DNA of 64,000 nt, from NCBI RefSeq assembly GCF_040938485.1, contig NW_027271282.1, positions 496,001 through 560,000 on the forward strand, in the 5' to 3' direction. The stretch is from Diadema antillarum (taxonomy: Eukaryota). The stretch's first letter is position 1; the number at the start of each line of letters is the position of its first letter. The notes beneath the pieces are model-generated. The model searched no databases. It was not told where the DNA came from and saw nothing but the letters and a program-made list of their open reading frames with translations. Positions 9,616-63,471 of this stretch are shown one piece after another. A program made the position numbers and the translations under genes.

Positions 9616-9805
9616 CTAAGCAGGACTGAGGTGTGAGGTGACTGTGTAACACTCTCTAGAGGTCGCTCCTAAACACCCTGCGTTGTAGTGTAACCGCTAC
9701 GTTTCCTGCAAGCTGTACGTCGAGCCTTGGATTGGTAGAAACCTCACGTACACTGCTGGCAGGGTTGTAGGCCAGAGGGTGATATGTGACCAGCTGCTCA
9801 TGGTT
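9616..9805 (-). pseudogene. Terminal exon containing a decayed third GCC2_GCC3 repeat
   Basis: Good acceptor CCTGTCCTGTATCACAG; phase-1 reading EP*AAGHISPSGLQPCQQCT*GFYQSKARRTACRKRSGYTTTQGV, then a frameshift to GATSRECYT. Confidence 0.8.

Positions 9806-63471: not shown

What the first reader, a model, noticed from the sequence alone, without database searches (positions are those of the whole stretch)
9798..63471. Large secreted HYR/Sushi/GCC mosaic protein with an architecture I do not recognise
Seen: a complete, phase-consistent model of ~1,880 aa, SP-H-SS-H-SSSS-H-SSS-H-SSS-H-SS-HH-S-linker-GCC-GCC. Established: the C-terminal S-S-H-H-S-linker-GCC block mirrors the middle of SVEP1/polydom, and HYR arrays are typical of sea-urchin hyalin. 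Unlike SVEP1, there is no VWA, EGF, pentraxin or C-terminal Sushi array and no membrane anchor; the N-terminus is a long alternating HYR/Sushi rod. Inference: a lineage-specific extracellular matrix, adhesive or immune-recognition protein that is still growing by module duplication. About a third of its exons are invisible in the ORF track.
Basis: partly seen in the sequence, partly recalled or inferred. Interest (0 to 1): 0.72.

Follow-up and report, generated by a model that had tools for sequence, protein, structure and literature searches.

The report
Sea-urchin SVEP1-like HYR/Sushi rod gene

Summary
The window is Diadema antillarum, contig C394. On its minus strand lies a phase-consistent gene of 32 exons: 5,610 nt, 1,869 aa, ATG at 63471, stop at 9800-9798.

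25 exons match RefSeq Gnomon models (23 residue for residue, two with one substitution). On this contig RefSeq splits the locus into four fragments. On the other assembled haplotype (C66) it gives one 1,674-aa model. The six N-terminal exons are in no RefSeq model I found. They rest on Pfam hits, splice logic and collinearity with paralogues.

The architecture is not unique. The same order occurs in D. antillarum XP_071494424 and its near-identical second copy, and in a 2,055-aa S. purpuratus protein. Longer urchin proteins carry the same rod plus EGF arrays.

The gene is not visibly growing. Its module count equals the family pattern. H1-S1 and H2-S3 are homogenised copies, and this haplotype has lost most of one Sushi exon through a 382-bp deletion.

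The "linker" is a conserved four-cysteine module with a polybasic convertase motif (WRKR here, RR[K/R]R in relatives). Human SVEP1 is reported to have a furin site at the matching position.

RNA evidence was inconclusive and function is untested. I rate it a new member of a known kind, of low to moderate interest. The scan had already noted the internal duplication (s1-217903).

The parts
63417..63471 (-). Exon 1: ATG plus an 18-residue hydrophobic signal-like peptide, phase-1 donor GTAAGT
   Evidence: It is the best of all ATG/hydrophobic/phase-1-donor candidates within 26 kb upstream. It is in no RefSeq model I found, so this is inferred.
58061..58190 (-). HYR 1, first half; GC-AG donor (AG|GCAAGT)
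   Evidence: No Pfam hit on its own, but its twin at 45780-45909 matches HYR profile positions 1-40.
56594..56712 (-). HYR 1, second half
   Evidence: Pfam HYR, E 3e-8; phases.
48752..48946 (-). Sushi 1
   Evidence: Pfam Sushi, E 8e-9. 92% amino-acid identity to Sushi 3. Contigs of runs X5 and X6 lie on 48801-48949.
47354..47539 (-).
   Evidence: Pfam Sushi, E 1e-8. 45-60% identical to the second Sushi of paralogues.
45780..45909 (-). HYR 2, first half; GC-AG donor
   Evidence: Pfam HYR, E 0.006, profile 1-40.
42959..43077 (-). HYR 2, second half
   Evidence: Pfam HYR, E 5e-9. 38 of 39 residues match RefSeq P0023.
37126..40524 (-). Sushi 3-6: exons 40524-40330, 39143-38952, 38290-38096, 37332-37126
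   Evidence: Pfam. Exact substrings of RefSeq P0023 or P0025.
36535..36598 (-). Remnant of a fifth Sushi exon: first 64 nt only, no donor. A 382-bp stretch present in haplotype C66 is missing here.
Evidence: The exon is intact with AG/GT sites in C66.
34759..35991 (-). HYR 3 in two exons (35991-35888, 34927-34759), phase-0 intron
   Evidence: Pfam on the second half. Exact in P0023.
31458..34419 (-). Sushi 7-9: exons 34419-34210, 33257-33072, 31655-31458. The N gap 33693-33829 lies in the intron between the first two.
   Evidence: RefSeq models P0021 and P0023 splice across the gap.
29685..30571 (-). HYR 4 in two exons (30571-30436, 29806-29685), phase-2 intron
   Evidence: Pfam on both halves. 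Exact in P0021 and P0023.
23614..28896 (-). Sushi 10-12: exons 28896-28708, 27685-27500, 23814-23614
22620..22859 (-). HYR 5, single exon
   Evidence: Pfam, E 7e-8. Exact in P0022 and P0023.
21308..22197 (-). Sushi 13-14: exons 22197-22009, 21517-21308
18762..20509 (-). HYR 6 and HYR 7: exons 20509-20258, 19007-18762
   Evidence: Pfam, E 9e-12 and 2e-5. Exact in P0001 and P0023.
17880..18077 (-). Sushi 15
   Evidence: Local profile. Exact in P0001 and P0023. No Pfam hit alone.
13453..14608 (-). Linker module in two exons (14608-14337, 13699-13453): four conserved Cys and a polybasic site, WRKR|S
   Evidence: No Pfam family. Conserved across the family. Low-confidence beta-alpha-beta / beta-alpha model.
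12864..13025 (-). Ephrin_rec_like (GCC2/GCC3) 1
   Evidence: Pfam PF07699, E 2e-15.
11755..11916 (-). Ephrin_rec_like (GCC2/GCC3) 2; strong phase-1 donor AGGTAAGT
   Evidence: Pfam PF07699, E 5e-15.
9798..9805 (-). Last coding exon: E-P-stop
   Evidence: RefSeq P0001 and P0023 both end ...CREP, and paralogue P0015 ends ...CREPV.

Best explanation
[quoted passage not shown] It is a 'short-form' member of an echinoid family related to SVEP1/polydom.

Shown:
- It encodes about 1,870 aa in this haplotype, and about 1,937 aa in the other if the same N-terminal exons apply there.
- After the signal-like peptide comes a rod of 7 HYR and 15 (or 16) Sushi modules.
- The module order is fixed and conserved across the family.
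- After the rod come a conserved four-cysteine linker module and two ephrin-receptor-like (GCC2/GCC3) modules.
- The protein then ends, with no membrane anchor.

Inferred mechanism:
- The protein enters the secretory pathway.
- It is exported as an elongated extracellular matrix or cell-adhesion protein whose Sushi and HYR modules bind partners.
- In the family generally, a furin-type convertase cuts at the RR[K/R]R motif in a loop of the linker. That would separate the rod from the GCC pair or leave the two held together, as reported for the furin site at the same position of human SVEP1.
- In this gene the motif reads WRKR, so cleavage may be weaker.

The near-identity of modules H1-S1 and H2-S3 comes from a copying event inside the gene (conversion or replacement), with no net gain of modules.
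For: - Gene model: one search gives full phase consistency. One search shows 23 exons identical to RefSeq models P0001, P0021, P0022, P0025 and P0023, and two more with one substitution each.
- Species and haplotypes. PMC13511894 states that the 1.75-Gb assembly retains both haplotypes.
- Same architecture in relatives: (collinear at 35-63% identity with P0015).
- Tree: the short-form clade has 96/99 support and includes S. purpuratus proteins.
- Gene ends: no further minus-strand Sushi or HYR exon in 30 kb upstream. A divergent paralogue lies upstream and a convergent ACE-like gene downstream.
- Linker: conserved Cys and polybasic columns. Furin site 'shortly before' R997 of human SVEP1 (PMC13722417).
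- Both copies of the internal repeat are under constraint: exons 93% identical against introns about 83%, dN/dS 0.49. Both copies are present in both haplotypes.
- Homogenisation: H1/H2 88% and S1/S3 92% identical here, against 30-49% in four relatives.
Against: - No transcript evidence was obtained. The single read-laying run (32) showed mostly repeat-derived contigs and no GT-AG or GC-AG joints. There were no contigs on Sushi 2 in the two RNA-like runs, and one contig appears to run from Sushi 1 into its intron.
- The six N-terminal exons, the signal peptide and the two GC-AG introns are in no RefSeq model I found.
- RefSeq cuts this haplotype into four genes.
- This haplotype carries a truncated Sushi exon, and a LINE lies in one of its introns.
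- Function and cleavage are untested. The linker fold is low-confidence (pLDDT 63, best Z 6.5).
Confidence: 0.8

Rival explanations
1. The locus holds two or more separate genes, or an N-terminal block that is not expressed. The true gene would start near 43609, as in RefSeq XP_071484067, and the SP-H-S-S-H exons would belong to another transcript or be relics.
For: - RefSeq models start at MATVIAM (43609) on C66 and split C394 into four genes.
- No contigs of runs X5 or X6 lie on Sushi 2, and no joints were seen.
Against: - The MATVIAM start lacks a signal peptide and begins in the middle of a HYR domain.
- Paralogues P0015, P0051, P0052 and P0050 all start SP-H-S-S-H.
- The N-terminal exons are open, Pfam-positive, phase-matched and more conserved than their introns.
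- No other minus-strand gene start lies in between.
Confidence: 0.12
2. The copy in this window (haplotype C394) is a decaying allele. The 382-bp deletion in a Sushi exon, the LINE in an intron and the W in the convertase motif would mark a gene on its way to becoming a pseudogene.
For: -: the exon is truncated here and intact on C66.
- A LINE with long open frames lies at 51065-54350.
- WRKR stands where relatives have RR[K/R]R.
- The gene sits on a long branch in the tree.
Against: - All 32 exons of the model are open with intact splice sites.
- Skipping the remnant keeps the frame, because its neighbours are phase 1-1.
- WRKR is shared with the C66 allele (P0023), so it is not specific to this haplotype.
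- The two haplotypes are otherwise about 97-100% identical over the stretches compared.
Confidence: 0.1
3. The gene model is the same, but the role differs. The protein would be a humoral immune-recognition or complement-regulator-like factor of coelomocytes rather than a matrix or adhesion protein.
For: - Long CCP arrays are typical of complement regulators.
- RefSeq names relatives 'complement receptor type 1/2-like', 'P-selectin-like' and 'E-selectin-like'.
- The family is large and clustered: 35 matches to one Sushi pair across the two haplotypes.
Against: - Those names are automatic.
- None of the tools here gave expression or binding data.
- The fixed module order across about 200 My of urchin evolution and the SVEP1-like hinge fit a structural role better than a fast-diversifying receptor.
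Confidence: 0.25

Closest known systems
Echinoid short-form 'SVEP1-like' predicted proteins: D. antillarum XP_071494424.1 (P0015, 'complement receptor type 1-like') and its near-identical second copy P0051, S. purpuratus P0052 (2,055 aa), S. purpuratus XP_011670897.1 (P0037), D. antillarum P0053
   Same: Same module order, SP-H-SS-H-S(n)-H-SSS-H-SSS-H-SS-HH-S-linker-GCC-GCC. Same linker with four Cys and a polybasic site. Same abrupt C-terminus (CREP or CREPV). Collinear with the window exon by exon at 35-63% identity.
   Different: - This gene has homogenised H1-S1 and H2-S3 modules.
- Its polybasic site reads WRKR instead of RR[K/R]R.
- This haplotype has four instead of five Sushi modules between H2 and H3.
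- Some relatives have three GCC modules.
- None of them has been studied experimentally, as far as the paper searches showed.
Echinoid long forms: D. antillarum XP_071495824.1 (P0050, 3,564 aa), D. setosum XP_072179392.1 (P0019), Lytechinus P0041 and P0018
   Same: They carry the same HYR/Sushi rod, HH-S-linker and GCC block in their N-terminal half.
   Different: They continue with a third GCC, about 18 EGF modules, TSP1, a further Sushi and more GCC. The window gene stops after the second GCC.
Vertebrate SVEP1 / polydom (3,571 aa; ligand of integrin alpha9beta1, partner of TIE1 and angiopoietin-2)
   Same: - It shares the Sushi-HYR-HYR-Sushi block followed by ephrin-receptor-like modules. 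The domain order is from my own knowledge; the domain content is as listed in PMC13722417.
- A furin site is reported just before R997, between those two blocks, where this family has its polybasic motif.
   Different: - The window gene has no VWA, EGF array, pentraxin or C-terminal run of about 28 Sushi modules.
- SVEP1 has two HYR modules and no alternating HYR/Sushi rod.
- No vertebrate SVEP1 reached E 0.001 in the library-wide phmmer search with the first linker exon.
Sea-urchin hyalin
   Same: It also has HYR modules and is a secreted protein with an extracellular adhesive role.
   Different: Hyalin is a long tandem HYR array without interleaved Sushi modules and without a GCC pair (my own knowledge). 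Here only 7 HYR modules are set among 15 Sushi.

Membership tests
Vertebrate-type SVEP1/polydom | N-terminal von Willebrand factor A domain | tested here: not met
   No VWA hit in any exon scan. No further minus-strand Sushi or HYR exon in 30 kb upstream, and no long open stretch there that looked like a domain on reading; those stretches were not scanned against Pfam.
Vertebrate-type SVEP1/polydom | EGF / EGF_CA repeats and a pentraxin domain | tested here: not met
   None found in the exon scans. The gene ends two codons after GCC 2, and a convergent gene follows.
Vertebrate-type SVEP1/polydom | Long C-terminal Sushi array | tested here: not met
   There is no Sushi after the GCC pair.
Vertebrate-type SVEP1/polydom | Sushi-HYR-HYR-Sushi block followed by ephrin-receptor-like modules | tested here: met
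   Exons 22197-11755 encode S-S-H-H-S-linker-GCC-GCC.
Vertebrate-type SVEP1/polydom | Furin cleavage site between that block and the ephrin-receptor-like modules | tested here: inconclusive
   A polybasic column is conserved in relatives (RR[K/R]R), but here it reads WRKR and lacks the P4 Arg. The human site is known only from a statement in PMC13722417. Cleavage was not tested.
Echinoid short-form HYR/Sushi/GCC family (RefSeq predictions) | Module order H-SS-H-S5-H-SSS-H-SSS-H-SS-HH-S-L-GG | tested here: met
   The C66 allele has S5, and this haplotype has S4 plus a remnant.
Echinoid short-form HYR/Sushi/GCC family (RefSeq predictions) | Conserved linker (N-L-P, Y, four Cys, basic motif) | tested here: met
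   Alignment A1: invariant L12 P13 Y18 C23 F33 C46 C52 C61 R70.
Echinoid short-form HYR/Sushi/GCC family (RefSeq predictions) | Ends right after the GCC modules, with no anchor | tested here: met
   The window gene ends ...CREP*. Tails of 0-7 residues in P0015, P0051, P0052, P0053 and P0037.
Echinoid short-form HYR/Sushi/GCC family (RefSeq predictions) | Groups with family members in a tree | tested here: met
   The short-form clade has 96/99 support. The window gene sits with P0053 and P0037 at 94/95, on a long branch.
Hyalin | Long uninterrupted tandem array of HYR repeats | tested here: not met
   There are 7 HYR modules. Only HYR 6 and 7 are adjacent; the rest are separated by 2-4 Sushi.
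Regulators of complement activation (CR1-like) | Pure CCP array with a membrane anchor or a short tail | tested here: not met
   HYR, linker and GCC modules are present, and there is no hydrophobic C-terminus.
SEA-like domain (for the linker only) | Alpha/beta sandwich with the cleavage loop between strands 2 and 3 | tested here: inconclusive
   The AF2 model has mean pLDDT 63 and topology beta-alpha-beta-(site)-beta-alpha. Foldseek found nothing at E <= 0.001. VIA-align found only generic ferredoxin-like matches at Z 5-6.5, among them an entry containing MUC16 (8gkl_E) at Z 5.3 and residues 370-525 of Gpr126 at Z 5.2.

The most novel reading that the evidence does not exclude
Sea urchins would keep a family, not yet described in print, of secreted polydom-like proteins. 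In it a convertase-cleaved, SEA-like hinge couples a fixed HYR/Sushi rod to a GCC pair. Natural alleles would differ in rod length (a Sushi exon deleted in one haplotype here) and in the strength of the cleavage motif. That would give heritable variation in an extracellular adhesion or recognition molecule of a species hit by mass die-offs.
Probability: 0.2. Interest if true: 0.5.

Novelty: new member of a known kind. Interest (0 to 1): 0.27.

Why it matters
- **Annotation.** RefSeq splits this locus into four genes on one haplotype and truncates it on the other. The model here restores a signal peptide and about 260 N-terminal residues.
- **Family context.** The alternating HYR/Sushi rod is a conserved feature of echinoid SVEP1-like proteins and is not a one-off.
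- **A testable lead.** The unnamed linker with its conserved polybasic site sits where human SVEP1 is said to be cut by furin. This suggests that the hinge and its processing are old features of the polydom lineage.
- **Limits.** None of this would surprise a specialist in extracellular mosaic proteins.

Tried and rejected
1. **Micro-exon idea.** I considered a 20-nt micro-exon (56766-56747) and a retained polypyrimidine stretch in copy 2 to repair the frame between the HYR halves. I dropped both once the GC-AG donor AG|GCAAGT, conserved in both copies, gave a direct in-frame join of the length seen in paralogues.
2. **Assembly artefact.** I tested whether the internal duplication is a haplotype artefact. 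It is not: the copies are only 80-90% identical, and both are present on both haplotype contigs.
3. **Read laying.** It gave repeat-dominated contigs and no splice joints, so it says nothing firm about expression.
4. **The look-up of encoding contigs.** It holds no record for this genome.
5. **N-terminal orthologue.** The D. setosum protein P0062, a candidate for the N-terminal block, turned out to belong to another paralogue, at 40-60% identity.
6. **Recurrent module-number variation.** The 157-residue length difference between P0015 and P0051 looked like a second case between haplotypes. Both contigs hold the two Sushi exons that account for most of it, so that part is an annotation difference.
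7. **Fold searches.** Searches with the linker model gave only generic ferredoxin-like matches.
8. **Duplicated-tract boundary.** The match 46869-47280 against 59655-60048 coincides with a very high-copy repeat, so I do not count it as part of the duplicated tract.
9. The joined spliced protein was not sent to any search or fold tool, and the N gaps were neither filled nor looked up.

Full report
**What the window is.** The window is G000:C394:496001-560000 of a 1.75-Gb assembly in 2,963 contigs. Exact look-ups of the proteins it encodes give Diadema antillarum RefSeq entries on a contig of the same length, 1,252,194 bases. The assembly paper says this 1.75-Gb version retains both haplotypes, with 84.4% of BUSCO genes duplicated and a haploid size of about 0.7-0.9 Gb (PMC13511894; preprint). 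Contig C66 carries a second copy of this locus at about 97-100% identity over the stretches compared. I treat it as the other haplotype.

**Check of the observation.** The gene lies on the minus strand.
- I scanned thirty stop-free stretches one by one against Pfam.
- Three Sushi exons and two HYR first halves gave no Pfam hit on their own. They fit a profile built from the window's other exons (a circular test). Apart from the first half of HYR 1, they are identical to parts of RefSeq proteins.
- I fixed splice sites by phase. Sushi exons and single-exon HYR exons are all phase 1-1. Four HYR modules are split by an intron of phase 2, 2, 0 and 2.
- The model has 32 exons, 5,610 nt and 1,869 codons plus stop, with no internal stop and AG at every acceptor.

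**The frame between the HYR halves.** In HYR 1 and HYR 2 no GT donor gives the phase that the second half needs. Both copies have AG|GCAAGT, the consensus of GC-AG introns, at the one position that keeps the frame. The join reads ...GTPTV-R-RISGK..., the same length as in paralogues. RefSeq's model also enters the second half of HYR 2 in that phase.

**The N gaps.** All three lie in introns of the model.
- 33693-33829 is spliced across by RefSeq models P0021 (this contig) and P0023.
- 50342-50480 and 57146-57276 lie in introns of the first H-S unit. The second unit has no gap and no extra exon at the matching places, and paralogue P0015 is continuous there.

**How public annotation treats the locus.**
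- A library-wide phmmer search with the first linker exon found XP_071496307.1 (P0001, 592 aa) at 100% identity.
- The cluster look-up showed that RefSeq cuts this contig's locus into four models of 592, 374, 139 and 184 aa. On the other haplotype it has one model of 1,674 aa (P0023, XP_071484067.1).
- 23 of my exons are exact substrings of these models, and two more differ by one residue.
- P0023 starts with seven residues (MATVIAM) from an intronic ATG at 43609 and then enters the middle of HYR 2. It has no signal peptide and lacks the first six exons.
- Those six exons are supported by several lines. They have Pfam hits and matched phases. They are collinear with paralogues that begin SP-H-S-S-H. 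They show signs of constraint (see the internal repeat, below).
- Exon 1 is also the best signal-like ATG exon with a phase-1 donor within 26 kb upstream.

**Gene ends.** No further minus-strand Sushi or HYR exon lies in the 30 kb upstream. A paralogue on the plus strand begins about 22 kb upstream, and an ACE-like gene on the plus strand lies downstream.

**The joined protein.** The joined spliced protein was not sent to any search or fold tool.

**A difference between the haplotypes.**
- P0023 has a fifth Sushi between Sushi 6 and HYR 3.
- In the window only the first 64 nt of that exon remain, at 36598-36535.
- C66 has 382 more bases at this point. There the exon is intact, with AG and GT sites.
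- Because the neighbouring exons are phase 1-1, skipping the remnant keeps the frame.

**The family.**
- P0015 (XP_071494424.1, 1,808 aa, same species, another contig) is collinear with the window exon by exon at 35-63% identity and ends CREPV.
- A word search with its C-terminal third found a 96% identical second copy (P0051), S. purpuratus proteins of 2,055 and 1,516 aa, and further D. antillarum paralogues. Their precomputed Pfam content is mainly HYR, Sushi and Ephrin_rec_like.
- I parsed module order with local profiles. P0051 and P0052 read H-SS-H-SSSSS-H-SSS-H-SSS-H-SS-HH-S-L-GG. This is also the window gene with its fifth Sushi restored.
- Proteins of 3,300-3,560 aa from Diadema and Lytechinus have the same rod and hinge. 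They continue with a third GCC, about 18 EGF modules and TSP1.
- In a maximum-likelihood tree of the HH-S-L-GG region the short forms make a clade with 96/99 support. P0015 pairs with S. purpuratus P0052 (100/99). The window gene sits with P0053 and S. purpuratus P0037 (94/95), on a long branch.
- The architecture therefore predates the split of Diadema and Strongylocentrotus.
- One Sushi pair finds 35 places in the two-haplotype assembly, so the family is large and clustered.

**The internal repeat.**
- Blocks 40249-46570 and 48665-58835 match at 80-90% DNA identity, introns included.
- Both copies are present on both haplotype contigs, so this is not an assembly artefact.
- The exons are 93% identical against about 83% for the introns, with dS 0.12 and dN/dS 0.49.
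- In four relatives the corresponding modules H1/H2 and S1/S3 are only 30-49% identical. Here they are 88% and 92%.
- Since the module count equals the family pattern, this was a copying of one H-S unit over the other, or a duplication with replacement. There was no net gain.
It is 45-60% identical to that of paralogues.

**The linker.**
- The two exons 14608-14337 and 13699-13453 match no Pfam family.
- Across eleven family members the invariant positions are L12, P13, Y18, four Cys and one Arg. A nearly invariant R-R-[K/R]-R follows '(V/I)TCG'.
- In the window gene, and in its C66 allele, the motif is WRKR.
- An AlphaFold2 model built on this alignment has low confidence (pLDDT 63). Its topology is strand-helix-strand, then the basic loop, then strand-helix.
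- Foldseek found nothing significant. VIA-align found only generic ferredoxin-like folds at Z 5-6.5, among them an entry containing MUC16 and residues 370-525 of zebrafish Gpr126. From my own knowledge those are SEA domains. A SEA-like hinge is therefore a lead and no more.
- A 2026 eLife paper states that human SVEP1 has a furin cleavage site shortly before R997 (PMC13722417). By my own knowledge of the domain map, that lies between the HYR-Sushi block and the ephrin-receptor-like modules, where this family has its basic motif.

**Expression.**
- The run search found no run on record as RNA. It found small 'echinoderm metagenome' RNA-Seq runs holding 9-14% of the sampled words, and three runs of unknown kind holding about 27%.
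- Laying four runs on 42950-48949 gave mostly repeat-derived contigs.
- Contigs of X5 and X6 lie on Sushi 1 (48801-48949), with five differences from the window. By the last three letters they seem to run on into the intron.
- None lies on Sushi 2, and no splice joints appear.
- This settles nothing.

**Literature.** Paper searches found no study of these urchin proteins beyond automatic 'Svep1' labels in expression tables.

**Verdict.** The thing itself is a further member of a conserved echinoid SVEP1-like family. I put 0.8 on the gene model and family assignment and about 0.4-0.5 on the secreted matrix or adhesion role with convertase processing, which remains inference.

Noticed in passing
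window 51065-54350 (+), flanked by the N gap 50342-50480: A LINE-type retrotransposon with two long open frames, of 475 aa and 642 aa; the second reads like a reverse transcriptase. It lies in the intron between HYR 1 and Sushi 1 and has 48-51% GC against 31-42% in the rest of the window. The two copies of the internal repeat are 3,064 bp closer together on haplotype C66, so the element may be absent there.
   Followed up: partly
window 49312-50017 and 1-349: A repeat of about 700 bp with more than 40 copies at about 97% identity across the genome. That suggests a recently active element.
   Followed up: partly
window 46950-47349 (also 59655-60048): A repeat with summed contig depth near 900,000 in runs X5 and X6, far above everything else in the laid stretch. 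It is either extremely abundant or highly expressed.
   Followed up: no
L005-L006 (C394:581600-590000, about 22-30 kb upstream of the ATG), + strand: A head-to-head paralogue. Its Sushi and HYR exons are collinear with residues 184-599 of the long forms P0019 and P0050 at about 50% identity. Another family member lies near C394:436202.
   Followed up: partly
G000:C66:~942000-996300 and C2579:3015-4214: The whole locus is present a second time (haplotype C66) and in part a third time (small contig C2579) in the assembly. This fits the published statement that both haplotypes were retained.
   Followed up: yes
window 58056-58061 and 45775-45780 (-): Two GC-AG introns with a perfect AG|GCAAGT donor, conserved in both copies of the internal repeat. 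A gene finder limited to GT-AG introns would not join these HYR halves, which might be one reason RefSeq lacks the N-terminal exons.
   Followed up: yes
   Followed up: no
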